A program made the position numbers and the translations under genes. Shown here piece after piece: positions 6,764 to 63,737 of a stretch of 64,000 bases of DNA. Where the stretch lies: positions 1-64,000 of the IMG/VR virus record IMGVR_UViG_3300019458_000020. One strand, given 5' to 3'. The notes beneath the pieces were generated by a model. That model was not told the origin of the DNA. It ran no database searches and saw only the letters and a program-made list of their open reading frames with translations. Numbering within the stretch: position 1 is the stretch's first letter; every line of letters starts with the position of its first letter.

Positions 6764-6764
6764 T

Positions 6765-7321: not shown

Positions 7322-7322
7322 A

Positions 7323-8885: not shown

Positions 8886-8886
8886 A

Positions 8887-10598: not shown

Positions 10599-10850
10599 TT
10601 ATTTACTTTGATGATTTTGATTTAAATAATTAACAATTTCATTTACCAATTGATTACATCCTTCTTCGGATTCTAATAAAGCCAGATCGCCGTCGGTGAG
10701 GCCAAATACAAACACCTTTCCGAGAGTCCACACAGCAAGTTCAACATCTGTATCCTTACATGTAATAGAATGACTTCCAGTAAATGATTCCCCCATTGCT
10801 TTCAGGGGAAACGTTTCATTAAGTAGTTTGAATAGATGTCTGGTTTTCAT
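10599..10850 (-). CDS. Hypothetical protein
   Basis: 83-aa ORF abutting the rmlA start. Confidence 0.55.
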   Translation of the reverse strand: MKTRHLFKLLNETFPLKAMGESFTGSHSITCKDTDVELAVWTLGKVFVFGLTDGDLALLESEEGCNQLVNEIVNYLNQNHQSK

Positions 10851-13103: not shown

Positions 13104-14312
13104 TTAACGTCCCACATCGTTAAAATATATCTGTCTAGCTTTTTCATAGGACATTCCACTCATATCTCCATAAAAGAGTTTCGTAGAGTTGAGCGGACCT
13201 GATGATTTTAATTTCTTATATCGTTCTATGGCTTTTGGTCGCCACCAATCCAATATGGCTTTTGTATCATACTGAAACAGTGGTTTCAAAATCAAATCCT
13301 TTTCTTCGATTTTATTTGATAGAAATTCTTTTGTGTTTTCGTAAAAACAAGAATAATATACACCCCGCTCAAATCCATGAACATAGTTAGATGATTTGAT
13401 TTGAGCAGAATCGAATATCATATTTATGACTCTTAATTTAGCTCCTGTAACAGGACCAGAAACATCTTCCTTCTGTGTCATCTTTTTCTCATATTCAGAT
13501 GATTTGTTTATCTTAATCCAATCATGCCACTTCTTATAAATTTTTTCTTCAGGTTGAATGGCAATCTTGCCGGCCGACGTTCCGCATTTATGCCACCATT
13601 TTAAACTATTATACATGGAGAATGAACCATAAAGGCTTGTCGTCGTCATTCCTACTAAAACAGAATCATACGTCCGTTTCCAAGCATCTCTGACTACTTT
13701 GGAAACTACCATTGCAGCGGATAACTTTCCTCCTAAGAATGGATAACCAAATGGTTGAGTAGAAACAATCGTTGTTCCAATTGCTGAATTAACTAATTTT
13801 CCTTCCTTGAGTTTATTATCCATTGACCATCCAATATAATTGTCTCTATCTCCAATGGAAATTACATCACTGGCAATTGAACATATTCCTAAGATTCTTG
13901 GATTATCAAGATTTCCATCATGGATCCAAAACTTCATAAATCTACCAGGTGCCTGATTAAATTCGGCAGAACTACAAAAATAACGAAGTGTGGTCCACAT
14001 TTTGTCATCTTCTTCGTTATCTATCAATTGAATTGTTGGAACCATGTTTTCAATTTCTTTTATGGTTCGTTCTTCATCCATGATATCTTCTGGTGCCCAT
14101 ATTTTTGCCTTGGCTACGCCAGCACGATTAAGGTGAGAATTCATAGCCTTTCTATCAGATATTTCTTCCCATTTTTTTCGAAAAGTAAATTCCTCAACAC
14201 TCAATGATTTAAGATAATCCATATTTTCTATCAACTTCCTTGTTTCTACATTAAGGTTAAATGAAGCTTGGGATGGTGCTGACTCAAAAAATATATCCGA
14301 TGTATCTGCCAT
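13104..14312 (-). CDS. DUF4338/DruA-like protein (long form)
   Basis: PGRFMKF, LGICSIASD, RDNYIGW, IVSTQPFG..FLGGKL, W...Y...LVGMTTTSLYG, W...G.SAG. Confidence 0.8.
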   Translation of the reverse strand: MADTSDIFFESAPSQASFNLNVETRKLIENMDYLKSLSVEEFTFRKKWEEISDRKAMNSHLNRAGVAKAKIWAPEDIMDEERTIKEIENMVPTIQLIDNEEDDKMWTTLRYFCSSAEFNQAPGRFMKFWIHDGNLDNPRILGICSIASDVISIGDRDNYIGWSMDNKLKEGKLVNSAIGTTIVSTQPFGYPFLGGKLSAAMVVSKVVRDAWKRTYDSVLVGMTTTSLYGSFSMYNSLKWWHKCGTSAGKIAIQPEEKIYKKWHDWIKINKSSEYEKKMTQKEDVSGPVTGAKLRVINMIFDSAQIKSSNYVHGFERGVYYSCFYENTKEFLSNKIEEKDLILKPLFQYDTKAILDWWRPKAIERYKKLKSSGPLNSTKLFYGDMSGMSYEKARQIYFNDVGR

Positions 14313-20304: not shown

Positions 20305-21078
20305 TCAACTAAAAAACGGATTTTCGGTCTTATTATCGACTTTGATTTCCTCTATTTGTTCCTTATAGATAGTATCTTTTGGATAGGGTAAAAATGGGTG
20401 TTTTAGATTGGCTAATATTTTCTTCTTTTCGACCTTATTTCCCAATAAATACACATATCGATGTTTGGTGGATTCTTTTTTCCTCCAGAACGTTTTACCG
20501 ATGGTCTTTTTCAAATGTTCTACGTTATGAGAACCATAAGTGGAAAAGGCGGTTCTTGAATGCATCCATTTATACGGTGGCCCGATTTCTGAAATAGAAT
20601 AATTAGGCATTAAAGCTAATGAAGAATTCCCTTGATAGTAAAATCCTGAAGCCTGATAGATGGTTCCTCTGTGACCTTGTTCATTATCAGCATAACTTAT
20701 TACGGCTTTAACGTTAGGAAGATGCTTTGTCAACATCGATAAAGTCTTTGATATACAATAACTTTCTATATTTTTGCCGTATCCATCATAAATGACTAAT
20801 CGGGTTAATTCCGTAACTTGTTCCAAGGTTATGAGTGGAGATATAGATTCGGCTGCACTTCTTCCAACCGGGCCGCCGTAGATGACTGTTCCGATTAATT
20901 TTTCCTCATTGCCTTCAATGAATTGGGAGGGAGTTTTTGTATTAATGAAGATACCAAAAGCCACATCACATAGGGTCCATTTGTGACTATAATGATTTTT
21001 TTCGACAAATGATTTACCTATATCTTTAGGAATTACCCGTATTGACACGAGTGATGTATCGACATAACCTTCTTCCAT
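20305..21078 (-). CDS. Mom-family adenine-modification-like GNAT protein
   Basis: FVEKNHYSH, LIG..IYG.P, ELTRL, ESYCISK, VISYAD..QGHRGTIYQASGF.Y.G, KHRYVY. Confidence 0.85.
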   Translation of the reverse strand: MEEGYVDTSLVSIRVIPKDIGKSFVEKNHYSHKWTLCDVAFGIFINTKTPSQFIEGNEEKLIGTVIYGGPVGRSAAESISPLITLEQVTELTRLVIYDGYGKNIESYCISKTLSMLTKHLPNVKAVISYADNEQGHRGTIYQASGFYYQGNSSLALMPNYSISEIGPPYKWMHSRTAFSTYGSHNVEHLKKTIGKTFWRKKESTKHRYVYLLGNKVEKKKILANLKHPFLPYPKDTIYKEQIEEIKVDNKTENPFFS

Positions 21079-21833: not shown

Positions 21834-24800
21834 TTAAGATTTTGGTTTGATTTCGCAAACATCATTGCTGCAAAACCTTTCTACGTCCGCTTCTTCGTGT
21901 TTTATTCCTTTAAACCTCACAGGTTTTAATTTAGAGGATAGTTCATCGTAAGTTTCAATAGAAATGGTTTCGTAGGGCATCTGTTCGTATGCACCCTTTT
22001 CTGTAATAGGCAAAAATGAAATACCTTTTAGTTGATATTGATAGAAATTTAAAAGATGTTTGATTTGGTTCGCTTCATCCTTTCTAAAAGAAATGGTACA
22101 TGAAACTTGATTGTCTGCCCAATATCTTTGTAAGAACGCTGCCAGTGCAGCTTGTTCCCATATACTTACATCTTTAACTGGTCTTAGATTATCACCAATC
22201 TTGACAGGAATTTCTACAACAACAGTGGTATCTTCCGACCCCTTACAATCTTCGATGTGATATCCGGCTTCTTTTAATGGTCCAACTAAATCACTATATT
22301 TTGAAAGTCGCATTCTCCTTATGTAACAAACATTTTCTGGAAAATGAACGCCGGGGGTCGCACCGGCGACCAAACTCACCGTTCCACTTGGTTTGATAGA
22401 AGTCTTCTTTATACTTTTTGGTATGGCTAACCAATCGGAATATACTTCATCATAATACTCAATTTTTTTGTATCCCTTTTCGCACCATGTTTTAAATTCG
22501 TCTATTCCACGGTTAGCTAAAAATTGAACTATACCACTCATACTACAACCTATTCTTCTATTTCTTAACATTACTCTATTAGTTTCCGGCCAATGAGTTT
22601 GACCCAACGTCACTGTCTTGGCATACAAATATGCATATTTAAGTGTAACGAGAAAATCATCAAGATTTTCATGATTATTTGGGAATGTTTCAACTAAGCA
22701 GCATAATTCATAGCTTTCCAATGATTGTTCGAGACAATTGATTATTATAATCCCATCTACTTGATTATCAGAAACTTGTGTAATAATTGAATAATTATAA
22801 TTATCATCTACTGTAATGTTATATACATCTTCTTTTTCTGATAAAAATGTCACCGATTTAACTCGATGATTGTATCCTTTTTCTTTTTCAATTAATTCTT
22901 TGTAGCTTTTTAGAACGTAAGGATTTTCGGTTTTAAGAGATTCTGGATTTCTTATTCTAAAAGAAATTTTTCTATTTCGGCATTCTCTTTCCCATTCTTT
23001 CTTTAAAGGATTCCTATCCAAAGATTGTTTCAAGTCTTTGAATATCATAATTTGTTGATGTAATGTGTCTCTTTGTTTATTCTCAAAGTGGATCTTCTGC
23101 CCCTCTTTTCTAAATTTGATTTGTCCTTCGTGTTTATTTTGACATGAATGTGAACAAAATACAACATGGCGACTTCCCCAAGATACTATCATTTCATCAT
23201 TACATGTAATACATTTCTTCTTTGCAAACATTCGTTCGTTTACCCAAACTGTTTCTAAATCTGTCTTTTTTGATTGTTCTATATAGTATTCTTTATCCCA
23301 TTCTTTTTTATTTTTTTTCATTTTTGATGAATATAGTTCTCTACATTCGTCAGTATGAGAATTGGACAATCTTTTTAAATACTCTACATCTTTGCATCTT
23401 TCTTTCGTTTTTTCTCCAATTAATTTTTTCGATTCTTCCGTATGTTGTCTTCCAAACATAGGATTGTTTTCTCCTTGATTATCGTGGTCAGCATGAAATT
23501 TACAATGATCCTTAAATGTCATTAATTCTAGGTTATCTATAGAATTATTTAATCCATTATAATCTTTGTGATGAACAACTATTCCACCTTTACACCACCC
23601 ATTTGATTTCGATTCATTATATAGTTCGTTCCATTTTTCTGGATTGTGAAATTTAACAATTAAACGATGTTCCATTTCTCTTTTCCTTTTTACATCATTT
23701 GTATCCATGCTTACAATATAATATTTATTAGGATTATCCTTAAACATCTTTTCTTTTCTTTTTTGAAATCTTGGAAGAGAGTCTCCAATTTTTAAATCTT
23801 TAGCACGACACGTTTCTCCATTTAATAAAATCATTTTGTGGTCTGGAGTGACTCTTAATTTTCCTCCTTCTTCAAATTCTATTTCTACCAATTCTGCATT
23901 TTCTCTAGTCTTTCTTGGATTTCTTCCCCACTTTATTTCTACCATTCCACTTTTATTCATAGAATATACTGCAACATCATTTCCTTCTTCTGCTAATTCT
24001 TTTATAGAAACTGCATTTCTTCCGTCTGCAACTGCAATGAGAGTGTCTCCGGTTAAACAAGGATTACCCCCTTCAACCCGATGGTCTTTGTGGTCCATTC
24101 CATTATTCATCCTTGAATATCCTTTCATATTTTCCAACCAAGCATATCCCGGCTCACCATTTACTTTAGTTCTCTCGGCAGCATTGGAATAATCCATTCC
24201 CAAATCACAAAAGATAGAATTGTTTGATGTCCATCCATATTCAGACCGATGTGGATTCTTTTTATAATTTTTTAAATCCAAATATTCTTCTGAGTTGTAG
24301 TCACCAAATACAATTTCAGCCGTTCTTCTTACATTTCCAGCAACAACACACTTTCCAATAAGATTCATAACATCAACAATAGTAGTTGTTGTTATTAGGT
24401 GTCCTACATTTTTATCAAAAATTACACGAAGGGTTTTATGAAGTTCAATCAAGGGTTGAGAACCGGATGAAACACCACCGAACCCTTTAATTGGTTCGCC
24501 CGCGGCTCTTATTAATGAATAATCGAAATGAACTTCCTTGGTTTCAAGTAGATAGGATTCGATTAAAAGTTTTGTTGATTCGACCCAACCCTCTCTCGTA
24601 TCAGCAATTTTATAAATATTGTCGGGTGATGGGCTTGGTTTCCCTACTTTAATTTTCCCTGACCCTTTACAATCAAATCCAACACCAACACCCAACATTG
24701 ACATATCCATCAAAAAACAGAATGATTTTGACACATCCTCTTTTATGGTTGAGGTCGAAACGAATGCACAGTTATTTAGTGCGGCATATAAATGTCTTTC

Positions 24801-25133
24801 TTCGGTTATGGGGCTTCCCATCGACCACAATCCTCTTCCGGGAGGAAGAAATTTCATATTGAACATTCTATCATACATCTCTTGGGCAGATTTTTGAGCC
24901 TTTATTGAATTCCATCCAAGTTTATGTTGTTCAATCCATACCTTTTGCATGTTGAACGTTCCTTCTACTACTCGTTGAATTGTTTCCCACCATCTTTCAT
25001 TATCTCCATTGGCTTTCAAACGGGAGTATGTTCTTAAATAAACTAATGCACCTAGTCCATTGAATCCGAACGGTGGTTTTTGTCTTTTATATTTATCGAG
25101 GAAGCTATCAGTCAGCCGAAATTTACCATTCAT
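21834..25133 (-). CDS. nrdJ: Class II (adenosylcobalamin-dependent, RTPR-type) ribonucleotide reductase, intein-containing
   Basis: RTYSR, PPGRGLW, LNNCAF, GVGVGF, VVAGNVRRTA, GEPG, NP[intein]CLEQSL, TSIKPSGTVS, DNQVSCT, C-terminal CSNDVC. Confidence 0.95.
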   Translation of the reverse strand: MNGKFRLTDSFLDKYKRQKPPFGFNGLGALVYLRTYSRLKANGDNERWWETIQRVVEGTFNMQKVWIEQHKLGWNSIKAQKSAQEMYDRMFNMKFLPPGRGLWSMGSPITEERHLYAALNNCAFVSTSTIKEDVSKSFCFLMDMSMLGVGVGFDCKGSGKIKVGKPSPSPDNIYKIADTREGWVESTKLLIESYLLETKEVHFDYSLIRAAGEPIKGFGGVSSGSQPLIELHKTLRVIFDKNVGHLITTTTIVDVMNLIGKCVVAGNVRRTAEIVFGDYNSEEYLDLKNYKKNPHRSEYGWTSNNSIFCDLGMDYSNAAERTKVNGEPGYAWLENMKGYSRMNNGMDHKDHRVEGGNPCLTGDTLIAVADGRNAVSIKELAEEGNDVAVYSMNKSGMVEIKWGRNPRKTRENAELVEIEFEEGGKLRVTPDHKMILLNGETCRAKDLKIGDSLPRFQKRKEKMFKDNPNKYYIVSMDTNDVKRKREMEHRLIVKFHNPEKWNELYNESKSNGWCKGGIVVHHKDYNGLNNSIDNLELMTFKDHCKFHADHDNQGENNPMFGRQHTEESKKLIGEKTKERCKDVEYLKRLSNSHTDECRELYSSKMKKNKKEWDKEYYIEQSKKTDLETVWVNERMFAKKKCITCNDEMIVSWGSRHVVFCSHSCQNKHEGQIKFRKEGQKIHFENKQRDTLHQQIMIFKDLKQSLDRNPLKKEWERECRNRKISFRIRNPESLKTENPYVLKSYKELIEKEKGYNHRVKSVTFLSEKEDVYNITVDDNYNYSIITQVSDNQVDGIIIINCLEQSLESYELCCLVETFPNNHENLDDFLVTLKYAYLYAKTVTLGQTHWPETNRVMLRNRRIGCSMSGIVQFLANRGIDEFKTWCEKGYKKIEYYDEVYSDWLAIPKSIKKTSIKPSGTVSLVAGATPGVHFPENVCYIRRMRLSKYSDLVGPLKEAGYHIEDCKGSEDTTVVVEIPVKIGDNLRPVKDVSIWEQAALAAFLQRYWADNQVSCTISFRKDEANQIKHLLNFYQYQLKGISFLPITEKGAYEQMPYETISIETYDELSSKLKPVRFKGIKHEEADVERFCSNDVCEIKPKS
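22737..24059 (-). mobile_element. Intein (441 aa) with HNH endonuclease, NUMOD3 and zinc finger
   Basis: Starts CLTGDTLI after GGNP; block B VTPDH; HNH EHRL..VHHKDYNGLNNSIDNL; GENNPMFGRQHTEESK; block F DVYNITV; ends IIIIN before +1 Cys. Confidence 0.93.
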
Positions 25134-52245: not shown

Positions 52246-52869
52246 TTAATAGGTAAATTTCTTAAAAACAGAATACGGTTTATTCAAAGCTTTTAAGGCA
52301 ATTTCTACTTCTTTAAGACATTCATTTATTCCTCCACCTGTCAAAACAATATTGTTATATTGTTTCAAAAAATCCATCAAATCAGGAATATGAACACAGT
52401 CGGCCGCTGCCTGTAATAATGTATAAACTTCTTTCTTATCTATACGTCTATACTGTCTTAAATATTTTGCCCACATTTCTCTATCCATATCTCGTGAATC
52501 ACGAATGTTATTTTCATACATGAATCTTACAAAGTTAGCGACAGAATCTTCATCAATACTGTTATCCATACAATACCTAAAGAAAGCATAACCCTTATCG
52601 TAGAAAATTGAGGTATCTAAAACACTTTCGTCTAAAGCGTTGTCTAATAACCACGTCTTATAGTCTTGTTCGGACACCATTCCCATTGTGTCTTCTCCAT
52701 TATACAAGAAAATAATTTTGTAAGCTTCGTTATCTATACTGTTTAACCACTCACACCATTCGTGAGGTTTAAAAAATATTCCACCTTCATATTCTGGTTG
52801 AATATCAACATTCATTATAACTTTTCCCGAAAAAGATTCTTCTATTATAATGGATTTAAGAGAAGTCAT
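52246..52869 (-). CDS. Isochorismatase/nicotinamidase-like cysteine hydrolase fold protein with short leader
   Basis: IMNVDIQPEY and VLTGGGINECL; probable start MTSLKSIIIEE at 52869 (track start 52887). Confidence 0.55.
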   Translation of the reverse strand: MTSLKSIIIEESFSGKVIMNVDIQPEYEGGIFFKPHEWCEWLNSIDNEAYKIIFLYNGEDTMGMVSEQDYKTWLLDNALDESVLDTSIFYDKGYAFFRYCMDNSIDEDSVANFVRFMYENNIRDSRDMDREMWAKYLRQYRRIDKKEVYTLLQAAADCVHIPDLMDFLKQYNNIVLTGGGINECLKEVEIALKALNKPYSVFKKFTY

Positions 52870-53350
52870 TATAATTTTTTCCCTCATTATTTAAATCAAT
52901 GATTCTTTTTATTTCATTACCAGAATGTTGAATCAATGCTTTTAATCCAAAATGTAATGGATGTGGCCATTGTCCATATTCTACCCATTTATATTTGTCC
53001 GTTTCCCAATTTAAACGGGGGTCAAATTCGTCATCAACAATGGCCAAAAAATTATGATATTTAAATCCAGATTGTTTATCTTCATAAACATAAAGAGGAA
53101 TAAGTTTTTCAATGATTCCTCTATATCCTACTTCTTCAGTGGCTTCTCTTTTTACAGCCTTAGCAGGATTTTCACCTGAATCTATAGCGCCGCCCCACAC
53201 TCCCCAAGTCCCTGGTTGTAACACCATCATAGAACGGAGTGGTAACAATAACCTACCAGTGGTTTTCGCCATAAAAATACATCCAGCACCCTGTTTTCCC
53301 CAGAATCCGGTTCTTGATAAGGCACCACCATGTAGTTCGTCGTTACTCAT
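52856..53350 (-). CDS. Nudix hydrolase
   Basis: Nudix box GGAIDSGENPAKAVKREATEEVG. Confidence 0.92.
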   Translation of the reverse strand: MSNDELHGGALSRTGFWGKQGAGCIFMAKTTGRLLLPLRSMMVLQPGTWGVWGGAIDSGENPAKAVKREATEEVGYRGIIEKLIPLYVYEDKQSGFKYHNFLAIVDDEFDPRLNWETDKYKWVEYGQWPHPLHFGLKALIQHSGNEIKRIIDLNNEGKNYNDFS

Positions 53351-54898: not shown

Positions 54899-57800
54899 TT
54901 ATGCATTCGGGAAAGACGCACCGCTTGGAAGTACATTAAAATCAAGAACAATGAATTCTGCGGTTCTCGTTGGCTTAATGAAAATCTGACCATAGAGAAT
55001 GTTTCTATCAACAATGTCGGCTGTGTTGTTTTCTTCATCCATTTTAACGAAGAAAGCAAACAAACCAGAACGTTGTTGAACCGATTCCATGTAAGGGTTA
55101 ACAATGCTCAAGAATTTGTTTCTAGTAGCAGCTGTATTTTGTTCAAATACCAAGAATTTCGATGTAGAAGCGATAAACTTCTTCAAGTTAATCAACAATC
55201 TACGAACGTTAATTCTATCCAAAGCAGATGCATCGTTTTGTAGAGTCTTTTGACCCCAAACAACAACACCTTGACCTGGGAAGGCAGCAATTGGATTAAC
55301 CTTACCATCATACAGAGTGTCACGTTCTTCGTGAGTAGTTCTATCAGTTACCTGAATTGCCGTTGGGATACCACCACGGTTCAAACCAGCAGGAGCGAAC
55401 CATTCAGCAGCAACCTTGTCGTTAGCAGCATAAACTGCTGGAAGAACAACAGATGGAGGAACCGTTACAACTTTGTTAGTGTTTGTATCAAGGATTTTAA
55501 CCCAAGGATAATAAGCACCGGCGTAGTTGGTATCGTAAGCGGCAGCGTCAGACACAACTTCATCAATCTGACCGGCTGTTGGATTTCCATCATCAACATA
55601 CAAATCCATGATGAAGAAACAATCTCCACGAGCTTCACACATATCAACAACACGTCCGGTGACGTATGGGTGATGTTGGTGAACAATACCTGGAACCACA
55701 ATTAAGTTAATATCGAATTCATCGGAATTTCCTAAAGCGGTGATTGCTTGGTTATAAGCAACCGAACCAGCAGATGAAACCGTAGTACAATCTAATCCTT
55801 GGGTGTTACCAGGTATAATATCTCCACCCACATTAATTGCTGTGGCTGGTGATTGACCATCGAAACCACCTTGGAAACCAACAATGAATTTACGCATCTT
55901 GACGTAAGTGGATTCGTTAGCAGCATCGAATTCGGATGGTACAACGTTACTTCCACTTAGGAAAGAACCAATACCAACACCACCGATTCTGTAATCGTCA
56001 TCCAAAGCGAACGGAATGTTTCTTCCGATAGAACCGTAAGAACCAAACTCAGGCAATGGAGCAAAATATTCCTTATTATCGTCAGATGAACCAATTCCGG
56101 TTGAAGAAGTTGGATACAATCCAGCGAGTTCTACGTCCGCTCCGGTAGGAGCATCATCAAACGTCACGCCGGACGGATATTTGCCAGGATTTAGACCATA
56201 GACTGAAGCTTTGGTGTACTTCATAGCAGGAATCCAATGTCCAGCGCTAGAATTCATAGGAACTGTTAGAGCTTCGAATCCGTAAGGAATTGCTGTTTCA
56301 GGAAGAACCGAATCAGACATTTCGATACGAATATGTTTGCTGTTGTTGGAATACGTTCCAAATTCAATAATCTTACCCTTGAAATCAATGTAATCATATC
56401 TATCACCAATTCTACGAGCAATAAAGTTTGAAGAATTTGGGTCAAGATTTAAGTTATTGAATTGTTCAAGAACAACCGGACGTTTATCGGTATCACTCCA
56501 CCTTCTCAAAGTAAGAGTGAATGAACCCCAATCACTTCCAGGAACAGTTCCAGCCAATTTTACGTTACTAATTTCAATCTTGAACTGTTTGTTCATGATT
56601 GTTCCATCAGCTAACGTATGAACACGGAACAAACGGAATCTCGTTGGGTCTTGACCGGACTGCCAAGGAGCAATCTTTTGTGATAAGAACCAAGGAGTGA
56701 TAGCGTTAGTAATAGAAAATTCACTGTCTCCATTTGTCAAATCATCACTGAATTCATCGGTGAAGTTGAGTGGATCACCGGTGAATTGAGAAGCGTCTGG
56801 AAGAGCACTTCCAGAAACAAACCACTCGGTTCTATTACCATAAATTTCTGCAATAGCATTATTGAACACTTTATACAAGTAAGCAGCCTCAATTTTTTGA
56901 CCAGTCACTTGTAAGTCAGGGTCACCGACAGCAGCATTTAATCCGAATACATTCGTGATATATTTATTACTGGATGGGTTCAATGAGAATTGATATGTTC
57001 CAATAGTAGTCGAACTGTTACTGTTTTTCAACGTTAAGTTGAAATCGGAAGTGATATCCGAAGCATTAGTGTTTGCACTAGCGGTGATTAGTGAAGAATT
57101 CAAGAATCCCGGAGCAATTAAATCATTTATTCCACCAAACAAGGTATCATTCAATACTGCTAAGACTCTCAAATCCACAGTTGAACCGGATGACCACAAG
57201 TTTGTGCAAGGATCGAATGTTGGTTGACCATTTGGTGTGAAGTTACCATTGTATCTACCAAACGAACCGGATAGAACACCAGCCAATTGAATTGTTGGAG
57301 TTCCACAAGAACCAGTCGAAGTATAGAACGAACCACTGATTAGGTGAATAGATAAGAACGGAGCCGCACCACCGTTGTTGAAATTCAACGTCACATCATT
57401 AGCGAAAGAACCTGAAAATGTTCCGGCTGCAATTGAAGCAGAAATACTTGAACCAGTGTACCATGAGGCCGAAGGAGACGTTAATGTAGTAAAGCCCAAA
57501 CTAATGGTTTGTCCAGAATACAATACAGAACCACTTTGAGACGTTTTTGATAATAATGCGTTGTCCGCTGCTTGAGATTGGAACGTTACTGTTACCGATG
57601 CTGAATTCATCGTTAATATATTTGATGAGATGGAAACGCTTTGACTAAATTGTGCTCCGATAGAACCAGATAGAGTAATAAATGAACTACCTGATATTAA
57701 AGCACCAGCAGAACCGTGACGATTCCAAGTTCCTTTTACTGCCCAAAGAACAAATGGGTAATTTTGTTTATATCCAGTCAAACCACCTACACGACACACC

Positions 57801-58069
57801 GTTACAAGACCACGTTCTTTAAGGTATTCAGCGGCAGTATAAGGACCGTAATATACACCATCCGGAACACCGAATTGAGCTTGAAGTTCATTAATATCGG
57901 TAATTAGCTTAGGTGAAAATGCCGGACCTTTTGCGAATGGTGCCACAACAACGGCACCAATGTCAGCAACACCTTGTGCAATACCTGATTGGTCATTCTC
58001 ACGGGTAAATACACCAGGACTCACTATTCTGTCAACTGGACTAAATCTTCCACCTTCTTGGATCGGCAT
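54899..58069 (-). CDS. Contractile tail sheath protein (T4 gp18-like)
   Basis: SPGVFTREND, YYPWV, WFAPAGLNRG, LY...VNPI..FPG.G..VWGQKTL, RINVRRLL, FEQN, I.IKP.RTAEFI. Confidence 0.96.
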   Translation of the reverse strand: MPIQEGGRFSPVDRIVSPGVFTRENDQSGIAQGVADIGAVVVAPFAKGPAFSPKLITDINELQAQFGVPDGVYYGPYTAAEYLKERGLVTVCRVGGLTGYKQNYPFVLWAVKGTWNRHGSAGALISGSSFITLSGSIGAQFSQSVSISSNILTMNSASVTVTFQSQAADNALLSKTSQSGSVLYSGQTISLGFTTLTSPSASWYTGSSISASIAAGTFSGSFANDVTLNFNNGGAAPFLSIHLISGSFYTSTGSCGTPTIQLAGVLSGSFGRYNGNFTPNGQPTFDPCTNLWSSGSTVDLRVLAVLNDTLFGGINDLIAPGFLNSSLITASANTNASDITSDFNLTLKNSNSSTTIGTYQFSLNPSSNKYITNVFGLNAAVGDPDLQVTGQKIEAAYLYKVFNNAIAEIYGNRTEWFVSGSALPDASQFTGDPLNFTDEFSDDLTNGDSEFSITNAITPWFLSQKIAPWQSGQDPTRFRLFRVHTLADGTIMNKQFKIEISNVKLAGTVPGSDWGSFTLTLRRWSDTDKRPVVLEQFNNLNLDPNSSNFIARRIGDRYDYIDFKGKIIEFGTYSNNSKHIRIEMSDSVLPETAIPYGFEALTVPMNSSAGHWIPAMKYTKASVYGLNPGKYPSGVTFDDAPTGADVELAGLYPTSSTGIGSSDDNKEYFAPLPEFGSYGSIGRNIPFALDDDYRIGGVGIGSFLSGSNVVPSEFDAANESTYVKMRKFIVGFQGGFDGQSPATAINVGGDIIPGNTQGLDCTTVSSAGSVAYNQAITALGNSDEFDINLIVVPGIVHQHHPYVTGRVVDMCEARGDCFFIMDLYVDDGNPTAGQIDEVVSDAAAYDTNYAGAYYPWVKILDTNTNKVVTVPPSVVLPAVYAANDKVAAEWFAPAGLNRGGIPTAIQVTDRTTHEERDTLYDGKVNPIAAFPGQGVVVWGQKTLQNDASALDRINVRRLLINLKKFIASTSKFLVFEQNTAATRNKFLSIVNPYMESVQQRSGLFAFFVKMDEENNTADIVDRNILYGQIFIKPTRTAEFIVLDFNVLPSGASFPNA

Positions 58070-58118
58070 ATAAGTTTCCTCTCTTTAGTTCTTTAAACGT
58101 CACGTTTATTTAACTAAA

Positions 58119-58126
58119 TATAAATA
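58119..58126 (-). promoter_or_regulatory. TATTTATA putative late promoter
   Basis: 49 nt upstream of sheath ATG 58069. Confidence 0.6.
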
Positions 58127-58162
58127 TGTCATATTTTTTCAAAAGATAATTCAATTTATTTT

Positions 58163-58747
58163 TTAATTTATATATTTTCTCCACCCTTTATATTGACGAT
58201 ATCTACCCTTATTCACTCCATACATTCCACCCTCATTTAACTTATTTTCCCTACAAAATGATTTTAAATTACGAATTGAAACGACTTCACCAGAAGTAGA
58301 TATAAATCTATGGATTTTTGATTTGGAGTCGGACATTTTCTTCTTGGTTTCCGACGAAAGTTTTTTACCATAACTGGGATTTTTATTTCCCGTTCTTAAC
58401 CTCGATAACAATTTTTTGGTTTTTTTCGACAACCTACGACCCCTAGGGGAAGGTGGTTTGGATGATAAAAAATTAAAATTATAGTATTTCTGTGGTTCCA
58501 CCGAAGCATTAGTTAGATAGAACTGTTCGATTAAAAGCAGAAATGGTTCAAAACACGTTTCTATTACCTTAAATTCAAAATTCTCTTCACCGTGTTTATT
58601 CCATGCGTTTTGAAGATAGGGGTTTTCGTGTATCCCCTTTTTTAACTTCCACCTATGTTTGTAAAACCTTACATCCGTGTTATTCGAAGACCCAACATAT
58701 ATCTTACCGTCAATTCGGTTTACTATATAATAAATCCCACACATCAT
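58163..58747 (-). CDS. GIY-YIG homing endonuclease with NUMOD3
   Basis: CGIYYI.N....KIYVGSS....R...H, H.N..LQNAW.K.G..NF, EQ.Y, YN; GNKNPSYGKKLS.ETKKKMS. Confidence 0.9.
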   Translation of the reverse strand: MMCGIYYIVNRIDGKIYVGSSNNTDVRFYKHRWKLKKGIHENPYLQNAWNKHGEENFEFKVIETCFEPFLLLIEQFYLTNASVEPQKYYNFNFLSSKPPSPRGRRLSKKTKKLLSRLRTGNKNPSYGKKLSSETKKKMSDSKSKIHRFISTSGEVVSIRNLKSFCRENKLNEGGMYGVNKGRYRQYKGWRKYIN

Positions 58748-59022
58748 CTCTTATCTGGAACGAAAACCCCTTCATTTAGGTCGAGAGAACCCTCACCATA
58801 TTTTTTAATTAATTTATCAATTAACTCGTTTTCAGATTTTTTAAGACCCTCCCAATCATCTCTTAATGTCTGTTCCTTGTTTGTAACATTTTTTATAAAT
58901 TCATCCACTTGCATCTTTTCAAGATATAAAAGACCCATTTCAAAGGTTTTACTCTGAAACTTGTCTCTCAAAAGCTTGACTTCAACAAGCTCACTATCGG
59001 TCATTTTCATTGGCTCTGGCAT
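58744..59022 (-). CDS. Small coiled-coil protein (possible fibre chaperone)
   Basis: Helical; ends L.KKYG.G.LDL..G.F.P; lies next to the fibre genes. Confidence 0.55.
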   Translation of the reverse strand: MPEPMKMTDSELVEVKLLRDKFQSKTFEMGLLYLEKMQVDEFIKNVTNKEQTLRDDWEGLKKSENELIDKLIKKYGEGSLDLNEGVFVPDKR

Positions 59023-59060
59023 AACTTTTACTTTCTACGTTTTTACATATATCTTTCAAA

Positions 59061-62000
59061 TTATCTCAATCGAATATATTTAATCGAAGTTAAACTACTT
59101 GATACGACACCACGAGCAGCTGTTACATTTCTCGCAAAAATAGAAGCACTCACGGAACCCGTAACTGTCGTAACATTAGATAAATAGAAATAAACCTTAG
59201 CATTGGTAGCAGGTACATTAGCCATAGGTTCGACGGTTATATCTATATTATTTGTTGTATTTCTTAATTTGGCCCTTACTTCATCTCCTGACGTAGTACC
59301 AACAATTTGAACCATAGCTGTTACCTCGTATGTTCCGGCACCAGGTAATAGAACATCTGTATCACCTTGACCAAAATCCACACGAGCAGAAGTTTGCGTC
59401 AAAGAATAATTCGTTCCAGACCCAGTTACACTACTACATGTAATCAAAGAACAATAAGATGCCGAACCAACAATAGGCCCTTCAAAATAATTTGTATTAT
59501 CTGTTCCTAATTGATATACACCAAACTGCCCCGCGGCGTTAGAAGCAGAAGTTCTATTGATATAAACACCGTATGAAGCAGAATGTGCAACATTTGTTTC
59601 TACAAAAAATCCTGAAGCACTTACGATTGTACCCCTAGAACCAACATTTCTAATTATTGAATTAAACCCTTTTGCATTTATTATTGTACTACTAAATGGA
59701 TTGTTAGTAATAAATCCCTGCATGTTTGTTTGATAACCTACTGAACTTGTTACTGAACAAGACTGATTCAACGTCATTACGGAATTTGCTCCATACACTA
59801 TTGGGAATACTCTTGTTGTTCCTGTTAATGTAGTAAATAAACTTAATGCAGTAATATCACTAGTGATATCTACTGTGTTTTGCAATCCTACCGTGCAACC
59901 TATTTGTGCTCCTATTGCATCTGTATAACTTCCCGTTGTTCCGTTTGTTGATGTATCAGTTTCTACAAGAATGGTTCTAGGAAACGAGGATTGGGAATTC
60001 CTCATAGTAACCTGAAAGAATGTGCTTGGATTTAAAGTACCTAGAGAAATTCTTCCCGTTGATGAAATAGACATCCATCTGTTTTGATTAGCCACAAATG
60101 TTAACAAATTATTGTCTAAAGTTCCCATTGTAGCAGCCGCACCAAAAGAATTCCCGCCTTGTAAAAACGCATTGGAATCTGGTGTCAACTTACTAGCACT
60201 AATAGAATAAGATGATGTAACAGAATTATTTGACCAACTAGATGTTCCGAATAATGTTCCGGTGATTGGACCACGGAAAAAATTATGATCTGAGGTACCC
60301 TCTTGCCATATTCCATACGTGGAAGAAGCGGTTGCTGGATTTAAAAATATCCCGTATGCAGTATCATTTGCTTCATTAAATTGAACAAATAAACCTACAC
60401 TATTACTTACGTAGTTAGCAAATTTTCTACCATCAACATAATAATGATAAAGATTTCCCAGGCTTCCGCTGCCTATAAAATTAGTTTGAGCTGAAAATCC
60501 ATGAGCCGTAGTTGCACTACCAGTGTTTTGAATTTGTGTTATACCCTGTACACCTATCATTAAACTGGCACTCTGATTCCCCTGTATATTAGACCTAGCA
60601 TCTATAGCCGTAGCATACTGTGACGGAGCTGCATTATTTGAAATAGTAGAAACAATAGCGGCACCAACAAATCGTGTACCGTGAGAGTTGGGAGCAACGG
60701 TTATACTCATTCCTTGAGAAAATCCTGAACTTCCCGTTCTAGCATTAGATATACTAACGGCATCAATAGATGCGGTATCTACTTTAGAAACATAAAGGTT
60801 GGCAACAGGATTTGCACCTATACCTACCCATCCAGAACCAGTAGGTTGTATCGTAACCGCTGTGGTATTATTTACCTCTAATTGAAGTGCATTATTATCA
60901 TTCGTTCCTAAAATACCGGCGGCACCAAAAGAATTACCATCCTGAATAAAGGCATTGGAATCTGATGTTAATTTACTAGAGGATACTGCGTATGATGCAC
61001 TAACTGCATTACTAGATGTTCCAAATAAGGATGCTGTAGCATTACCGTTTAAAAAGCTAGAACTTATTGAATTATTTGACCACGAAGATGTAATTTGATA
61101 TGTCGAACCTGTAAACAGTGTAGTTCCCCCCTCACTACTAGGAGAAGATAAGGCAAACGATGCAGTTAAAGCATAAGAAGAACTCACTGCATTACTAGCA
61201 GTACCAAACAATGAAGCAGTGGCATTACCATTCAAGAAGCTGGAGCTTATTGAATTATTAGCCCATGAGGATGTAATTTGATAAGTCGAACCAGTAAATA
61301 ACGTGGTTCCGCCGCCGGCACTCGGTGATGTCAAAGCAAATGAAGCTGTAAGAGAATATGATGAACTAACTGCATTACTTGACGTACCAAATATTGACGC
61401 AGTGGCATTACCATTCAAGAAGCTGGAGCTTATTGAATTTCTCGAATTATTTGCCCAAGAAGCCGTTCCCTCCAAACTTCCACTTTGTCTTACAAATACA
61501 CCCGTTCCTACTCCTGTATATTCTGCTGATGTTAAATGATAATACTCATTAACCTGTCCACCCTGTAGATTAGATAATGCATTGTGATCCGATGCTGGGG
61601 ACGGAGTAAATAAAGTAACAAATGTAGAATCTATTTCTGTTGCTGATGATGCTCCATTTGCTACTATTATTCTTCCTATTAATATAGACAGTCCGGTTTG
61701 TGGAGATAATACATTAGGTAGATTAGCTGGCGGCTGCGACGCCACAGCCTGAAACAAAAGGTAATTACCTGTACCTAATACAACGTAGGTATCCCCACTA
61801 GAAACAGACCTATAAACGAAATTCACCGCATACCTAGTGCCGAAACCGGACAAACTAACTAAATTTGTTCCATCATCATATTGAGTATTGTTGTATTGTG
61901 TAGTTAAAGAACTTGTCCACTCTCCCCCAACATGAAAAAAGAATCGATATGGTGTAGTAAATGTATTTGTAGAAGCGATATCAATCGATGTCGCTCCATA

Positions 62001-62759
62001 CCACACTGTTCCTGATGTGGCTGTTATATATCGGGAACCACTTTCCCCGAGTGCTAATCCAGTTTCCCAAGCAAATCTCCATGTTCGGATGAATCGTTTA
62101 TTGAGCTTATTTCCCATTCCGAATGCCAAATCATCAATGGTAATATATTCAAAAGAATTATAAATAGTTCTATTTATAGTTGCAACGGTAATGATATTTG
62201 TTCCTGTAATTCCTGCTCGATTATCCAGTATATCAAATCGGGGATTGCCGCTATTATAGTCCGCAACTATAAAATAGGTACTTCCTGTCATTGATGCGCT
62301 TAGGGATGCACTCTGAAGGAAATAATTCTTTAGAGTTCCATTCGCTGTAGGTGTGTCAAACAACTGAGCGGAAGCAGAAGATACTAAAATGATGTTACCT
62401 GTTAATTCAAGAGTTGGTTGGTTAGTTAATCCTGCATTAATCAATAATACCGGTCCAGGAATAATGTGAGAAGATGATAATGCATACGATGCCGACAACG
62501 ACGTAGGTGAAAACGTAGAGTATGATGATGAAATAGATAAACTTGATGTCGTGGAGAAACTAGATGATACAGAAATTAAAGTATTACTTGAAGTACCAAA
62601 AAGAGACGATGTTATAGATGTAGCATAAATATTTCTCCAATTTAGAGAAGAAGAACCAAAGTCAAAAGCATTATTAACCGTTGGTATCAAAGATCCCGAA
62701 CGGTTTAATACGTTCCTTTGTAAATTATCTCTATAAGATGCTGTATTTACATTCGACAT
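59061..62759 (-). CDS. Tail fibre/spike-like Ser/Thr-rich repeat protein
   Basis: SSSY/ASFA/SSWA repeats, HN.L.NLQGG...YYHLT motif, duplicated GNSFGAA modules. Confidence 0.75.
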   Translation of the reverse strand: MSNVNTASYRDNLQRNVLNRSGSLIPTVNNAFDFGSSSLNWRNIYATSITSSLFGTSSNTLISVSSSFSTTSSLSISSSYSTFSPTSLSASYALSSSHIIPGPVLLINAGLTNQPTLELTGNIILVSSASAQLFDTPTANGTLKNYFLQSASLSASMTGSTYFIVADYNSGNPRFDILDNRAGITGTNIITVATINRTIYNSFEYITIDDLAFGMGNKLNKRFIRTWRFAWETGLALGESGSRYITATSGTVWYGATSIDIASTNTFTTPYRFFFHVGGEWTSSLTTQYNNTQYDDGTNLVSLSGFGTRYAVNFVYRSVSSGDTYVVLGTGNYLLFQAVASQPPANLPNVLSPQTGLSILIGRIIVANGASSATEIDSTFVTLFTPSPASDHNALSNLQGGQVNEYYHLTSAEYTGVGTGVFVRQSGSLEGTASWANNSRNSISSSFLNGNATASIFGTSSNAVSSSYSLTASFALTSPSAGGGTTLFTGSTYQITSSWANNSISSSFLNGNATASLFGTASNAVSSSYALTASFALSSPSSEGGTTLFTGSTYQITSSWSNNSISSSFLNGNATASLFGTSSNAVSASYAVSSSKLTSDSNAFIQDGNSFGAAGILGTNDNNALQLEVNNTTAVTIQPTGSGWVGIGANPVANLYVSKVDTASIDAVSISNARTGSSGFSQGMSITVAPNSHGTRFVGAAIVSTISNNAAPSQYATAIDARSNIQGNQSASLMIGVQGITQIQNTGSATTAHGFSAQTNFIGSGSLGNLYHYYVDGRKFANYVSNSVGLFVQFNEANDTAYGIFLNPATASSTYGIWQEGTSDHNFFRGPITGTLFGTSSWSNNSVTSSYSISASKLTPDSNAFLQGGNSFGAAATMGTLDNNLLTFVANQNRWMSISSTGRISLGTLNPSTFFQVTMRNSQSSFPRTILVETDTSTNGTTGSYTDAIGAQIGCTVGLQNTVDITSDITALSLFTTLTGTTRVFPIVYGANSVMTLNQSCSVTSSVGYQTNMQGFITNNPFSSTIINAKGFNSIIRNVGSRGTIVSASGFFVETNVAHSASYGVYINRTSASNAAGQFGVYQLGTDNTNYFEGPIVGSASYCSLITCSSVTGSGTNYSLTQTSARVDFGQGDTDVLLPGAGTYEVTAMVQIVGTTSGDEVRAKLRNTTNNIDITVEPMANVPATNAKVYFYLSNVTTVTGSVSASIFARNVTAARGVVSSSLTSIKYIRLR
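60990..61440 (-). repeat. 183-nt (61-aa) tandem repeat, about 2.5 copies
   Basis: 41 nt identical at 61216-61256 and 61399-61439; a synonymously diverged copy at 61033-61073. Confidence 0.9.
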
Positions 62760-62807
62760 AGATGTTATAAAATGATATTAATATATAGGTAATTCCTAAA
62801 ACATTTA

Positions 62808-63737
62808 TTATGCTATTGAACAAGATCCCATAATATCATATACCAATATGGCACTAGGAATATCATAATTTCCAGAAAGAATAAATTGTAAACCAAAATT
62901 AGCACTTCCTGTAGCAACACCAGGGTCAAATATCTGTGATGAAATTGTCCGTCCACCAGCGTTATTATTAGTTTCATTTATAATAACGCCCGGTTGAGTA
63001 GAGGCAGTATCAAACGTTCCTTTCTGTAAAAGGAAATCAGCAACATATCCAATAGGTCCAACTCCCGGCCAAGCATTACCACAGATAGATAATTTTATAT
63101 AAGCACTTTGATTTGCTGCTAAACTAATCGTCAAAGCATTTGTATAAGATGATGTCGTTAAAGAAATTGTCTTAAATCCTCTTTGTGTATATTGATTGAA
63201 TAATACCGATGCTGTATTTGATAAATTAGAACTGCCAGCTGATGTAGCAAATAAAGCAAAACTTGAAGATAATGCATTTACTGAATGACTTGATGTTAGA
63301 GAATTAATTGCGTGACTTGCAGTTAAAGCATTTACCGCATGGCTAGAGGATAGAGACCCGATGGCATGAGACGCTGTGATTGCCCAACTTGCGGTAACTT
63401 GATAAGTTCCTGGAATAAGATAGGAAGCCGTATAAGCACTTGTTGCAAAGGATGACGATGTTGCGGTTTGGGAATGAACGGCATTACTTGCGGATTGTGC
63501 CCAACTTGAAGTAATAGCATACGTTCCTGGTATTAAATAAGATGCCGTGGCAGAAGTTGCAACACTTCCACTAATCTGTCCTGTTACAAAGACACTTTGA
63601 ACAAAAATATTTCTCCACTGCAAACTCGAAGTACCTAAATCATAAACTTGGTCTTGGGCCGGATTTAACGAACTCGAAAATCTCGACGAAGAAAGTGGTA
63701 TGTTATTTGAAAAAATTGGTCGATTTACATTTGCCAT
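62808..63737 (-). CDS. Tail fibre-like protein with 9-residue xASxA repeats
   Basis: YDLGTSSLQWRNIF motif; TASYLIPGTY twice; TASHA/SSSHA repeats. Confidence 0.7.
   Translation of the reverse strand: MANVNRPIFSNNIPLSSSRFSSSLNPAQDQVYDLGTSSLQWRNIFVQSVFVTGQISGSVATSATASYLIPGTYAITSSWAQSASNAVHSQTATSSSFATSAYTASYLIPGTYQVTASWAITASHAIGSLSSSHAVNALTASHAINSLTSSHSVNALSSSFALFATSAGSSNLSNTASVLFNQYTQRGFKTISLTTSSYTNALTISLAANQSAYIKLSICGNAWPGVGPIGYVADFLLQKGTFDTASTQPGVIINETNNNAGGRTISSQIFDPGVATGSANFGLQFILSGNYDIPSAILVYDIMGSCSIA

What the first reader, a model, noticed from the sequence alone, without database searches (positions are those of the whole stretch)
54899..63737. Dense [S/T]-G-S and [S/T]-A-S tripeptides in virion proteins: candidate glycosylation sequons
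Seen: by my count the sheath has 11 [S/T]GS. Nine lie within about residues 125-300 of the variable insertion and none in the conserved C-terminal core. The 1232-aa fibre has about 13, plus more than 20 [S/T]AS. Similar-sized RNR and hub proteins have about one each. In the sheath the flanking residues differ, so this is not tandem duplication. Established: sheath insertion domains face outward, and virion glycosylation by phage-encoded GTs is known in some actinophages. Inference: convergently accumulated acceptor sites for the glycan island, giving a sugar-coated tail.
Basis: partly seen in the sequence, partly recalled or inferred. Interest (0 to 1): 0.75.

Follow-up and report, generated by a model that had tools for sequence, protein, structure and literature searches.

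The report
Ser-Gly-Ser motif on phage virion surfaces
A large aquatic phage carries far more copies of the tripeptide [Ser/Thr]-[Gly/Ala]-Ser than chance allows on the outward-facing parts of its tail sheath, capsid and fibres. This fits, but does not prove, the idea that these are attachment sites for sugars made by the phage's own glycan genes.

Summary
The sheath (54899..58069, minus strand, 1056 aa) has 11 [ST]GS against 1.6-2.4 expected, nine of them at residues 126-294. The 1232-aa fibre has 13 [ST]GS and 22 [ST]AS.

- TAS, TGS, SGS and SAS are the four most over-represented of all 8000 tripeptides in the 250-kb proteome.
- The pattern is strict. Position 1 is S or T, position 2 is G or A, and position 3 is Ser only. 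[ST]GT is depleted.
- Codons vary, and the sheath has no internal repeat.
- In 48 sheath homologues the motif occupies 62 different alignment columns.
- In the sheath and the capsid protein it lies almost only in the outward insertion domains.

Five related genomes with GT2 genes share the enrichment. Four without a GT2 gene above the curated cut-off, including an equally related 484-kb phage, do not. One GT2 gene (3951..5195) is conserved across the family.

No tool can show glycosylation. In the fibres, [ST]AS is also the core of a six-residue structural repeat.

Verdict: a real, selected surface motif. A Ser-directed glycosylation sequon is the leading reading (about 0.4), and a purely structural code is the main rival (about 0.3).

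The parts
54899..58069 (-). Tail sheath gene, 1056 aa
   Evidence: Pfam Phage_sheath_1 (residues 771-943) and Phage_sheath_1C (948-1046). Residues 758-1054 align to T4 gp18 residues 343-652. More than 900 homologues.
56630..57757 (-). Sheath insertion region (residues 105-480), variable and beta-rich, carrying 14 of the sheath's 15 [ST][GA]S
   Evidence: The AlphaFold2 model has pLDDT 65-87 here and 41% strand. No solved homologue.
57182..57694 (-). Densest cluster: nine [ST]GS and three [ST]AS at residues 126-296
   Evidence: 9 [ST]GS against 1.3 expected in residues 110-310.
54932..55759 (-). Conserved sheath core (residues 771-1046) with no [ST]GS
58163..58747 (-). GIY-YIG/NUMOD3 homing endonuclease between sheath and fibre. 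It lies inside the reported range but is not part of the motif signal (0 motifs).
59061..62759 (-). Fibre protein, 1232 aa: 13 [ST]GS and 22 [ST]AS
   Evidence: Residues 105-415 resemble annotated tail fibre proteins. Member of a nine-gene paralogous family.
60894..61442 (-). Three tandem 61-aa repeats in the fibre (residues about 440-622), each carrying several [ST]AS and one TGS
   Evidence: Read from the sequence. Effect on the counts measured.
62808..63737 (-). Fibre paralogue, 309 aa: 8 [ST]AS inside six- and nine-residue repeats of the form [ST][AS]S[HWFY][AS][IVL](N[AS]L)
3951..5195 (+). GT2b: family-2 glycosyltransferase, 414 aa. It is the only glycosyltransferase of the island found conserved across the phage family and is the candidate initiating enzyme (inference).
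   Evidence: Pfam. Orthologues at 57-90% identity lie on the same long contigs as sheath homologues. 44% identity in Flavobacterium phage immuto. Conserved synteny.
167..3979 (+). Variable part of the glycan island: GT2, methyltransferase, GT11, DUF7796 and an unknown 306-aa ORF
   Evidence: Content differs between relatives.
5170..10598 (-). dTDP-sugar genes: RmlB (5170..6135), sugar C-methyltransferase (7656..8885), RmlD-like (8887..9738), RmlA (9735..10598)
   Evidence: Pfam. NCBIfam scores RmlA and RmlB above the equivalog cut-offs.

Best explanation
[Ser/Thr]-[Gly/Ala]-Ser is a selected recognition motif on the outward-facing, beta-rich parts of this phage family's virion. Those parts are the sheath insertion, the capsid-protein insertion domain, the fibres and other tail proteins. 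The most likely use is as an acceptor site for Ser-directed O-glycosylation in the host cytoplasm.

Proposed mechanism: the glycan would come from the phage's own island, which encodes dTDP-6-deoxyhexose synthesis, a C-methyltransferase, GT2 and GT11 enzymes and methyltransferases. The family-conserved GT2b would be the candidate first transferase, and the variable enzymes would build lineage-specific glycans. The result would be a low-charge, sugar-coated capsid and tail.

Shown:
- The motif is real, strict, encoded at protein level and confined to the insertion domains.
- It turns over between positions while its density is kept.
- It is shared by the relatives that carry GT2 genes.
- GT2b and the Rml genes are conserved and syntenic.

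Inferred:
- That any glycan is attached to protein.
- Which Ser is the acceptor.
- That GT2b is the enzyme.
- That the Ser side chains are exposed.
For: Strength and specificity:
- The four top-ranked of all 8000 tripeptides in the proteome are TAS, TGS, SGS and SAS, with z scores of 10-12.6.
- Only [ST]-G-S and [ST]-A-S are enriched, at 2.8-3.6 times expectation. Thr at position 3 gives about 1.0. Asn, Asp, Ala or Gly at position 1 give about 1. Ala or Gly at position 3 give 0.4-0.8 after Gly and 0.7-1.1 after Ala.
- In 48 sheath homologues [ST]GS is 5.0 times expectation and [ST]GT is 0.56 times. General strand or turn propensity does not predict that asymmetry.

Independence from fold and descent:
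- The motif occurs in proteins with no detectable similarity to each other.
- In the sheath model it sits in strands, at strand ends and at a helix start.
- It occupies 62 alignment columns, with 5-14 copies per homologue.

Location:
- 14 of the sheath's 15 motifs lie in the insertion.
- All 22 capsid-protein motifs in five genomes lie in the insertion domain, and none in the rest of the protein.

Link to glycan genes:
- Enrichment is present in five GT2-positive genomes and absent in four without a GT2 gene above cut-off. The four include LR756508, whose capsid protein is as close to ours (54% identity) as those of immuto and Mel-JY01.
- The Ser/Thr-rich, low-charge insertions of RM378 and S-T4 carry no excess, so Ser/Thr richness alone is not enough.
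- GT2b is as conserved as the sheath and lies on the same contigs in a fixed gene order.
- No ThyA-family hydroxymethylase or Tet/JBP enzyme was found in the held 74% of the genome, so there is no sign of the usual substrate for DNA glycosylation.
Against: - There is no direct evidence of any modification.
- No known O-glycosylation system uses this motif.
- GT2b's nearest solved relatives are polysaccharide synthases such as chondroitin synthase, and nothing marks it as acting on protein.
- Mel-JY01 shows the SGS/TGS excess but has only a distant GT2 (24% identity to GT2b).
- RM378 shows a proteome-level SGS/TGS excess with no GT2 gene above cut-off.
- LR756508 is not free of glycosyltransferases.
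- The nine genomes are related, and the capsid-protein tree does not resolve whether the traits changed together more than once.
- Motif Ser/Thr are no better conserved than other Ser/Thr in the insertion (0.66 against 0.61, P = 0.19).
- At the deeply conserved site 267 it is the Gly that never varies.
- In the fibres and in the 700-aa ORF the motif sits in periodic beta structure that needs no modification to explain it.
Confidence: 0.4

Rival explanations
1. Purely structural and physico-chemical code. Hydrophobic-[ST]-[GA]-S-hydrophobic would be this lineage's way of building uncharged, hydrophilic beta surfaces and fibre shafts. The small Gly or Ala packs inward or on a trimer axis and the two hydroxyls face water. 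Nothing is attached.
For: - [ST]AS has a strong periodic context: an aromatic residue at +3 (42%), Ala at +4 (6.7 times expectation), Ala at -2 (5.1 times) and a period of six residues.
- Nine paralogous fibres share this repeat.
- In the 700-aa ORF, ten motifs lie in long strands modelled at pLDDT about 90.
- Residues flanking [ST]GS are enriched for hydrophobic ones.
- Site 267 (SGSFGxYNG) is conserved as far out as Mel-JY01, with an invariant Gly.
- Substitutions to SAS, SGA and SQS occur.
- Other phages have their own over-represented fibre tripeptides, such as SGI in S-T4.
Against: - It does not explain why Thr, which suits strands better than Ser, is excluded at position 3 (5.0 against 0.56 times expectation).
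- It does not explain why Asn, Asp, Ala or Gly at position 1 show no excess.
- The same tripeptide recurs in unrelated folds and in different secondary-structure settings.
- The Ser/Thr-rich insertions of RM378 and S-T4 lack it.
- T4 structural proteins show no excess: 8 against 11.2 expected.
Confidence: 0.3
2. The motif is recognised by something other than a glycosyltransferase. Candidates are another Ser-directed modification such as phosphorylation or acylation, a fibre or tail assembly chaperone, or a binding surface made of Ser pairs for host polysaccharide. The glycan island would then serve another target, such as the host envelope or the DNA.
For: The same specificity and surface restriction as above. 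Nothing ties the island to protein. The window also carries DNA-modification-type genes, namely a Mom-like protein and two DruA-like proteins.
Against: No kinase or acyltransferase candidate was identified, but no systematic search for one was made. No hydroxymethyl-pyrimidine pathway was found for DNA glycosylation. The co-occurrence with GT2 genes would be coincidental.
Confidence: 0.15
3. Artefact of low complexity, of DNA-level repeats, or of descent from duplicated units.
For: The fibre has three 61-aa tandem copies and short periodic repeats. The regions are rich in Ser, Thr and Gly.
Against: - Shuffles within 25-residue blocks still give 11 against 2.4.
- Permuted orders (SSG, GSS and similar) are not enriched.
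- Codons are diverse.
- The sheath has no internal repeat.
- The collapsed fibre is still enriched.
Confidence: 0.03

Closest known systems
Virion O-glycosylation of mycobacteriophages by phage-encoded glycosyltransferases (Freeman et al. 2023, as summarised in PMC12619734)
   Same: Phage-encoded glycosyltransferases act in the cytoplasm, and the targets are abundant surface virion proteins.
   Different: There the glycans sit on the C-termini of the capsid and tail-tube subunits of siphoviruses and are shown by mass spectrometry. Here the candidate sites are internal tripeptides in insertion domains of a myovirus sheath, capsid protein and fibres, and nothing is shown experimentally.
Serine-rich repeat glycoproteins of Gram-positive bacteria (Fap1, GspB) glycosylated by GtfA/GtfB (from my own knowledge)
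   Same: Cytoplasmic, Ser-directed O-glycosylation of repeated S-[A/V/E]-S-type motifs. The fibres' [ST]AS repeats look superficially similar.
   Different: Those are long, disordered, low-complexity tracts modified by GT4-type enzymes and exported by an accessory Sec system. Here the motifs are scattered in folded beta domains, and no search specific for GtfA/GtfB was made. GalT1 of that pathway appears only among generic GT2 matches.
Heptosylation of autotransporter beta-helix repeats (AIDA-I/Aah, TibA/TibC) (from my own knowledge)
   Same: Cytoplasmic O-glycosylation of many Ser residues within repeated beta structure of a surface fibre-like protein.
   Different: That system uses a different enzyme family and ADP-heptose as donor. 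I did not search for a homologue here.
Virus-encoded glycosylation of chlorovirus and mimivirus virions (PMC9614988)
   Same: A large virus carries its own nucleotide-sugar pathways and glycosyltransferases and decorates capsid proteins or fibrils with unusual, lineage-specific glycans at non-canonical sites.
   Different: Those are eukaryotic viruses. In chloroviruses the linkage is N-linked at atypical sequons.
Structural shaft repeats of phage and adenovirus fibres
   Same: Short periodic repeats with small residues at fixed phase, as in the hexapeptide [ST][AS]S[YFWH]A[LIV] of the nine fibre paralogues.
   Different: This does not apply to the non-repetitive sheath and capsid insertions. 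No sequence match to solved fibres was found.

Membership tests
Contractile-tail sheath (T4 gp18 type) | Sheath subtilisin-like and C-terminal domains | tested here: met
   PF04984 (E 1e-12) and PF17482 (E 2e-8). hhalign to gp18 gives probability 99.7. The top PDB hits are gp18 chains.
Contractile-tail sheath (T4 gp18 type) | The extra domains are inserted upstream of the inner core, where gp18 carries its outer domains | tested here: inconclusive
   Only residues 758-1054 align to gp18 residues 343-652. The position of the insertion (105-480) matches the gp18 outer-domain region by order along the chain. There is no assembled model.
Phage glycan-biosynthesis island | Nucleotide-sugar synthesis enzymes together with glycosyltransferases | tested here: met
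   RmlA and RmlB score above the NCBIfam equivalog cut-offs. GT2 (two copies), GT11, a C-methyltransferase and an RmlD-like protein are found by Pfam.
Protein O-glycosylation sequon | Motif over-represented beyond composition and specific in residue order | tested here: met
Protein O-glycosylation sequon | Acceptor residues accessible on the surface of the target | tested here: inconclusive
   The motifs are confined to the outward insertion domains. The hydrophobic-S-G-S-hydrophobic phasing implies that the Ser residues face away from the core.
Protein O-glycosylation sequon | Co-occurrence of the motif excess with the transferase across genomes | tested here: inconclusive
   Five of five genomes with a GT2 gene above cut-off show the excess, and none of four without one. 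Only nine related genomes were compared, the tree is unresolved, the GT family was chosen after the fact, and Mel-JY01 lacks a close GT2b.
Protein O-glycosylation sequon | Glycan demonstrably attached to the motif Ser | not testable with these tools
   Needs glycoproteomics.
Protein O-glycosylation sequon | A transferase with demonstrated or family-typical protein acceptor | tested here: not met
   GT2b's best solved matches are polysaccharide or lipid-linked GT2 enzymes. No polypeptide GalNAc-transferase appears in the list.
Known bacterial sequons (Bacteroidota D-[ST]-[AILVMT]; N-x-[ST]) | Enrichment of those motifs in the same proteins | tested here: not met
   Sheath: 3 against 4.2 and 13 against 11.6. 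Fibre: 3 against 4.1 and 22 against 29.7.
Tandem or internal repeat protein | Detectable self-similarity | tested here: not met
   This verdict is for the sheath: the hhalign self-comparison finds no significant off-diagonal match. For the fibres the feature is met: 61-aa tandem copies and a six-residue period.

The most novel reading that the evidence does not exclude
[Ser/Thr]-[Gly/Ala]-Ser is a true O-glycosylation sequon read by a conserved phage GT2 enzyme. A widespread family of aquatic jumbo myoviruses and their cultured relatives, immuto and possibly Mel-JY01, would then coat the capsid, contractile sheath and fibres with variable, phage-made deoxy-sugar glycans. This would be the first sequence-defined sequon for phage virion glycosylation and the first glycosylated tail sheath.
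Probability: 0.3. Interest if true: 0.8.

Novelty: new variant of a known kind. Interest (0 to 1): 0.62.

Why it matters
Virion glycosylation by phage-encoded enzymes is established only for mycobacteriophages, where no short sequence rule is known. Large glycan-gene islands are common in jumbo phages and their purpose is mostly unknown. A strict three-residue motif confined to outward virion domains would give a sequence-based way to predict which phage proteins are glycosylated. It would also give a concrete role to a conserved glycosyltransferase.

The idea can be tested directly in cultured phages: Flavobacterium phage immuto, which has a GT2b orthologue, a glycan island and the motif excess, and Microcystis phage Mel-JY01.

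If the motif proves to be purely structural, it is still an unusually sharp lineage-specific sequence rule for building uncharged beta surfaces.

Tried and rejected
- DNA-level motif or slippage: rejected. The nine-base stretches encoding the motif are diverse.
- Cryptic internal repeat in the sheath insertion: rejected by hhalign self-comparison.
- Generic property of T4-type virion proteins: rejected. T4 structural proteins give 8 against 11.2 expected, and the whole T4 proteome 44 against 56.6.
- Simple Ser/Thr richness of exposed domains: rejected. RM378 and S-T4 have Ser/Thr-rich insertions without the motif.
- Known sequons: not enriched.
- PHROGs and Pfam searches on the other motif-rich ORFs returned almost nothing.
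- The ESM Atlas search on the sheath insertion was uninformative.
- The PDB sequence search with the fibre found nothing meaningful.
- Foldseek with the sheath model found only sheaths, and with the 700-aa ORF model nothing significant.
- Site-level conservation of motif Ser/Thr against other Ser/Thr showed no difference.
- A scan of 39 IMG/VR records for GT2 was uninformative about absence, because nearly all are small fragments.
- The Freeman 2023 paper was not held. I cite it only through PMC12619734.
Model coordinates are not exposed to scripts, so solvent accessibility was not computed.


Full report
**Context.** The window is the first 64 kb of a 250,813-bp IMG/VR virus record, estimated 74% complete, with about 35% G+C. 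The reported range holds five genes:
- a tail sheath gene (54899..58069, minus strand, 1056 aa; Pfam Phage_sheath_1 and Phage_sheath_1C at residues 771-1046);
- a GIY-YIG/NUMOD3 homing endonuclease (58163..58747);
- a small ORF;
- a 1232-aa fibre gene (59061..62759);
- a 309-aa fibre paralogue (62808..63737).

By capsid-protein identity the nearest cultured relatives are Microcystis phage Mel-JY01 and Flavobacterium phage immuto, both about 54-55%. The uncultured 484-kb phage LR756508 is equally close.

- The sheath has 11 [ST]GS. Nine lie at residues 126-294, the others at 419 and 705, and none in the Pfam C-terminal core.
- The fibre has 13 [ST]GS and 22 [ST]AS. The 309-aa fibre has 2 and 8.
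- The RNR (1099 aa) has one, and three other large proteins have 0-1.

Shuffles that keep composition give 1.6 for the sheath. Shuffles within 50- or 25-residue blocks give 2.1 and 2.4. None of 2000 shuffles reached 11. Within residues 110-310 the count is 9 against 1.3.

Other orders of the same residues are not enriched: S[ST]G 3, G[ST]S 3, [ST]SG 1. The fibre contains three nearly identical 61-aa tandem copies. After dropping two of them it still has 12 against 4.1 and 17 against 3.7. The sheath insertion shows no internal repeat by profile self-comparison. The motif is encoded by many different codon combinations, so this is a protein-level signal.

**The signal is wider and sharper than reported.**
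- A scan of all 8000 tripeptides over the 324 ORFs of the record ranks TAS, TGS, SGS and SAS first to fourth.
- The excess is 350 observed against 114 expected for [ST][GA]S. It is concentrated in about twenty proteins, while large neighbouring ORFs have none.
- Those proteins are the sheath, the gp23-type capsid protein (88680..90395), nine paralogous fibre genes, and several unrelated ORFs at 113-140 kb.
- In the capsid protein all seven motifs lie in residues 126-275, the insertion domain.

The residue rule is strict. [ST]-G-S and [ST]-A-S are 2.8-3.6 times expectation. Thr at position 3 gives about 1.0, and Asn, Asp, Ala or Gly at position 1 give about 1. Ala or Gly at position 3 give 0.4-0.8 after Gly and 0.7-1.1 after Ala.

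**Evolution in the sheath family.** I aligned 48 homologues at 60-87% identity.
- Each carries 5-14 [ST]GS, with mean 9.1 and variance 3.8. Nearly all lie in the insertion.
- The total is 436 against 87 expected (5.0 times), spread over 62 alignment columns. Of these, 27 are singletons and 5 are held by a majority of sequences.
- [ST]GT is depleted at 0.56 times, and control orders occupy 23-31 columns.
- A few sites are old. Site 179 is kept in 40 of 48 sequences and site 267 in 35 of 48. Site 267 has an invariant Gly and is recognisable in Mel-JY01 and in a short-sheath clade.
- Motif Ser/Thr are not better conserved than other Ser/Thr of the insertion (0.66 against 0.61, P = 0.19).

So the density is kept mainly by turnover, with a conserved minority of sites.

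**Structure.** The AlphaFold2 model of the sheath is usable in the insertion (pLDDT 65-87 over residues 101-380) and poor elsewhere. The region is 41% strand.
- Motif sites lie inside strands (156, 219, 245, 419), at strand ends or turns (126, 134, 252, 267, 294, 329) and at a helix start (205, 210). There is no single structural setting.
- Eight of the 11 [ST]GS sites have a hydrophobic residue just before the motif and five have one just after. Genome-wide, flanks are enriched for hydrophobic residues.
- In a strand, that phasing puts the Gly on the core face and both Ser on the other face. This is an inference.
- Only residues 758-1054 align with T4 gp18 (343-652), which forms the inner core. 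The insertion therefore occupies the place of gp18's outer domains. This too is inferred from order along the chain and from what is established about gp18.

The 700-aa ORF at 137868..139970 has 26 [ST]GS. Its residues 30-194 are modelled as very long strands at pLDDT about 90, carrying ten motifs. There the motif is part of an extended beta structure.

In the fibres, [ST]AS has a strong periodic context: an aromatic residue at +3, Ala at +4 and at -2, and a period of six residues. It is the core of a hexapeptide shaft repeat, [ST][AS]S[YFWH]A[LIV].

**The glycan island.** It is real.
- Plus strand, 167..5195: GT2, a methyltransferase, GT11, DUF7796, an unknown ORF and GT2b.
- Minus strand: RmlB, a sugar C-methyltransferase, an RmlD-like protein and RmlA.

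The island's content varies between relatives. GT2b is the exception. Orthologues at 57-90% identity lie on the same long contigs as the sheath homologues, recognised by matching contig lengths of 97,858, 214,804, 351,839, 284,403, 363,798, 192,368, 107,742 and 121,024 bp. The gene order GT2b, RmlB, RmlD, RmlA, kinase-like, clamp loader, DruA is conserved. Immuto has a 44% orthologue at the end of its own glycan island.

GT2b's closest solved relatives are generic GT2 polysaccharide synthases, so nothing marks it as acting on protein. No ThyA-family hydroxymethylase or Tet/JBP enzyme was found in the held part of the genome, so there is no sign of a substrate for DNA glycosylation.

**Comparison across nine genomes.** I called ORFs in each and compared orthologous proteins.

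| Genome | GT2 above cut-off | Motifs in sheath insertion | Motifs in capsid insertion |
|---|---|---|---|
| Own record | yes | 14 | 7 |
| G001 | yes | 12 | 2 |
| G003 | yes | 14 | 6 |
| immuto | yes | 5 | 3 |
| Mel-JY01 | yes | 6 | 4 |
| LR756508 | no | 0 | 0 |
| RM378 | no (one sub-threshold match) | 1 | 1 |
| S-T4 | no | 1 | 0 |
| T4 | no | 0 | 0 |

- In the five GT2-positive genomes no capsid motif lies outside the insertion.
- The exposed domains of LR756508 are charged (21-23% D, E, K, R) rather than Ser/Thr-rich.
- The sheath insertions of RM378 and S-T4 are Ser/Thr-rich yet lack the motif.

The caveats are serious.
- Nine genomes are few, and they are related.
- The capsid-protein tree leaves LR756508, immuto, Mel-JY01 and RM378 in a polytomy.
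- GT2 was picked after the fact, and LR756508 has a GT4 gene and two epimerases.
- Mel-JY01 lacks a close GT2b.
- RM378 has a proteome-level SGS/TGS excess in two ORFs.
- IMG/VR fragments could not extend the test.

**Weighing.** Several features fit a recognition motif better than a fold-bound structural element:
- the exclusion of Thr at position 3;
- the exclusion of non-hydroxyl residues at position 1;
- recurrence in unrelated proteins and in different structural settings;
- restriction to the outward insertions;
- turnover at constant density.

With a conserved glycan island present, Ser-directed O-glycosylation is the most economical reading, at about 0.4. A purely structural code is well supported for the fibres and the 700-aa ORF but explains the sheath and capsid insertions poorly. 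I give it about 0.3 overall. Another ligand or modification gets about 0.15, an artefact about 0.03, and the rest is unassigned. Neither the Bacteroidota sequon D-[ST]-[AILVMT] nor N-x-[ST] is enriched, so if this is a sequon it is a new one.

**Novelty.** Virion glycosylation by phage enzymes is known for mycobacteriophage capsid and tail-tube C-termini (cited in PMC12619734). Giant eukaryotic viruses also glycosylate their virions (PMC9614988). My literature searches turned up no report of a defined short sequon, a glycosylated sheath, or this motif. I rate it a new variant of a known kind, not yet verified.

Noticed in passing
window 21834..25133 (-): The class II (B12-type) ribonucleotide reductase carries an intein with an HNH/NUMOD3 homing endonuclease (Intein_splicing, residues 367-782).
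   Followed up: no
window 58163..58747 (-): A free-standing GIY-YIG/NUMOD3 homing endonuclease sits between the sheath and fibre genes, much like the seg genes of T4.
   Followed up: no
window 10819..11589 (-), 13104..14312 (-), 20305..21078 (-): Two DruA-like proteins (DruA is a Druantia defence component) and a Mom-family protein are encoded by the phage. One DruA-like gene is syntenic in relatives. They may have a DNA-modification or counter-defence role.
   Followed up: partly
window 7656..8885 (-): A sugar C-methyltransferase (Methyltransf_14 C-terminal domain) lies next to the RmlA, RmlB and RmlD-like genes. This suggests a branched-chain C-methyl 6-deoxyhexose, which is unusual for a phage.
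   Followed up: no
window 62808..63737 (-); genome 63752..64672, 79381..80823, 148281..154537: Nine paralogous fibre genes share a hexapeptide shaft repeat. In the 309-aa protein the units are nonads with one His each (TASHAINSL / TSSHSVNAL). This is reminiscent of metal-binding His layers in fibre needles, but it is untested.
   Followed up: partly
genome 137868..139970 (-) (L085:13868-15970): A 700-aa ORF with 26 [ST]GS is modelled with 25-37-residue strands at pLDDT about 90. It has no PDB fold match and no Pfam or PHROG family. It is probably a new fibre or baseplate beta structure.
   Followed up: partly
LR756508 capsid protein (171904..173538) and sheath (205952..208426): This equally related 484-kb phage has charged (D, E, K, R 21-23%) exposed insertions instead of Ser/Thr-rich ones. 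That is a switch in surface chemistry within the clade.
   Followed up: partly
L196 (ENA contig of 22 kb, protein named 'Candidatus Pelagibacter sp.' by a source): The contig carrying this GT2b homologue looks like a phage glycan island, with many small ORFs and the same GT2/DUF6492/epimerase set. It may be a phage fragment binned into a bacterial MAG.
   Followed up: no
window 52856..53350 (-): A NUDIX hydrolase gene lies two genes downstream of the sheath gene.
   Followed up: no
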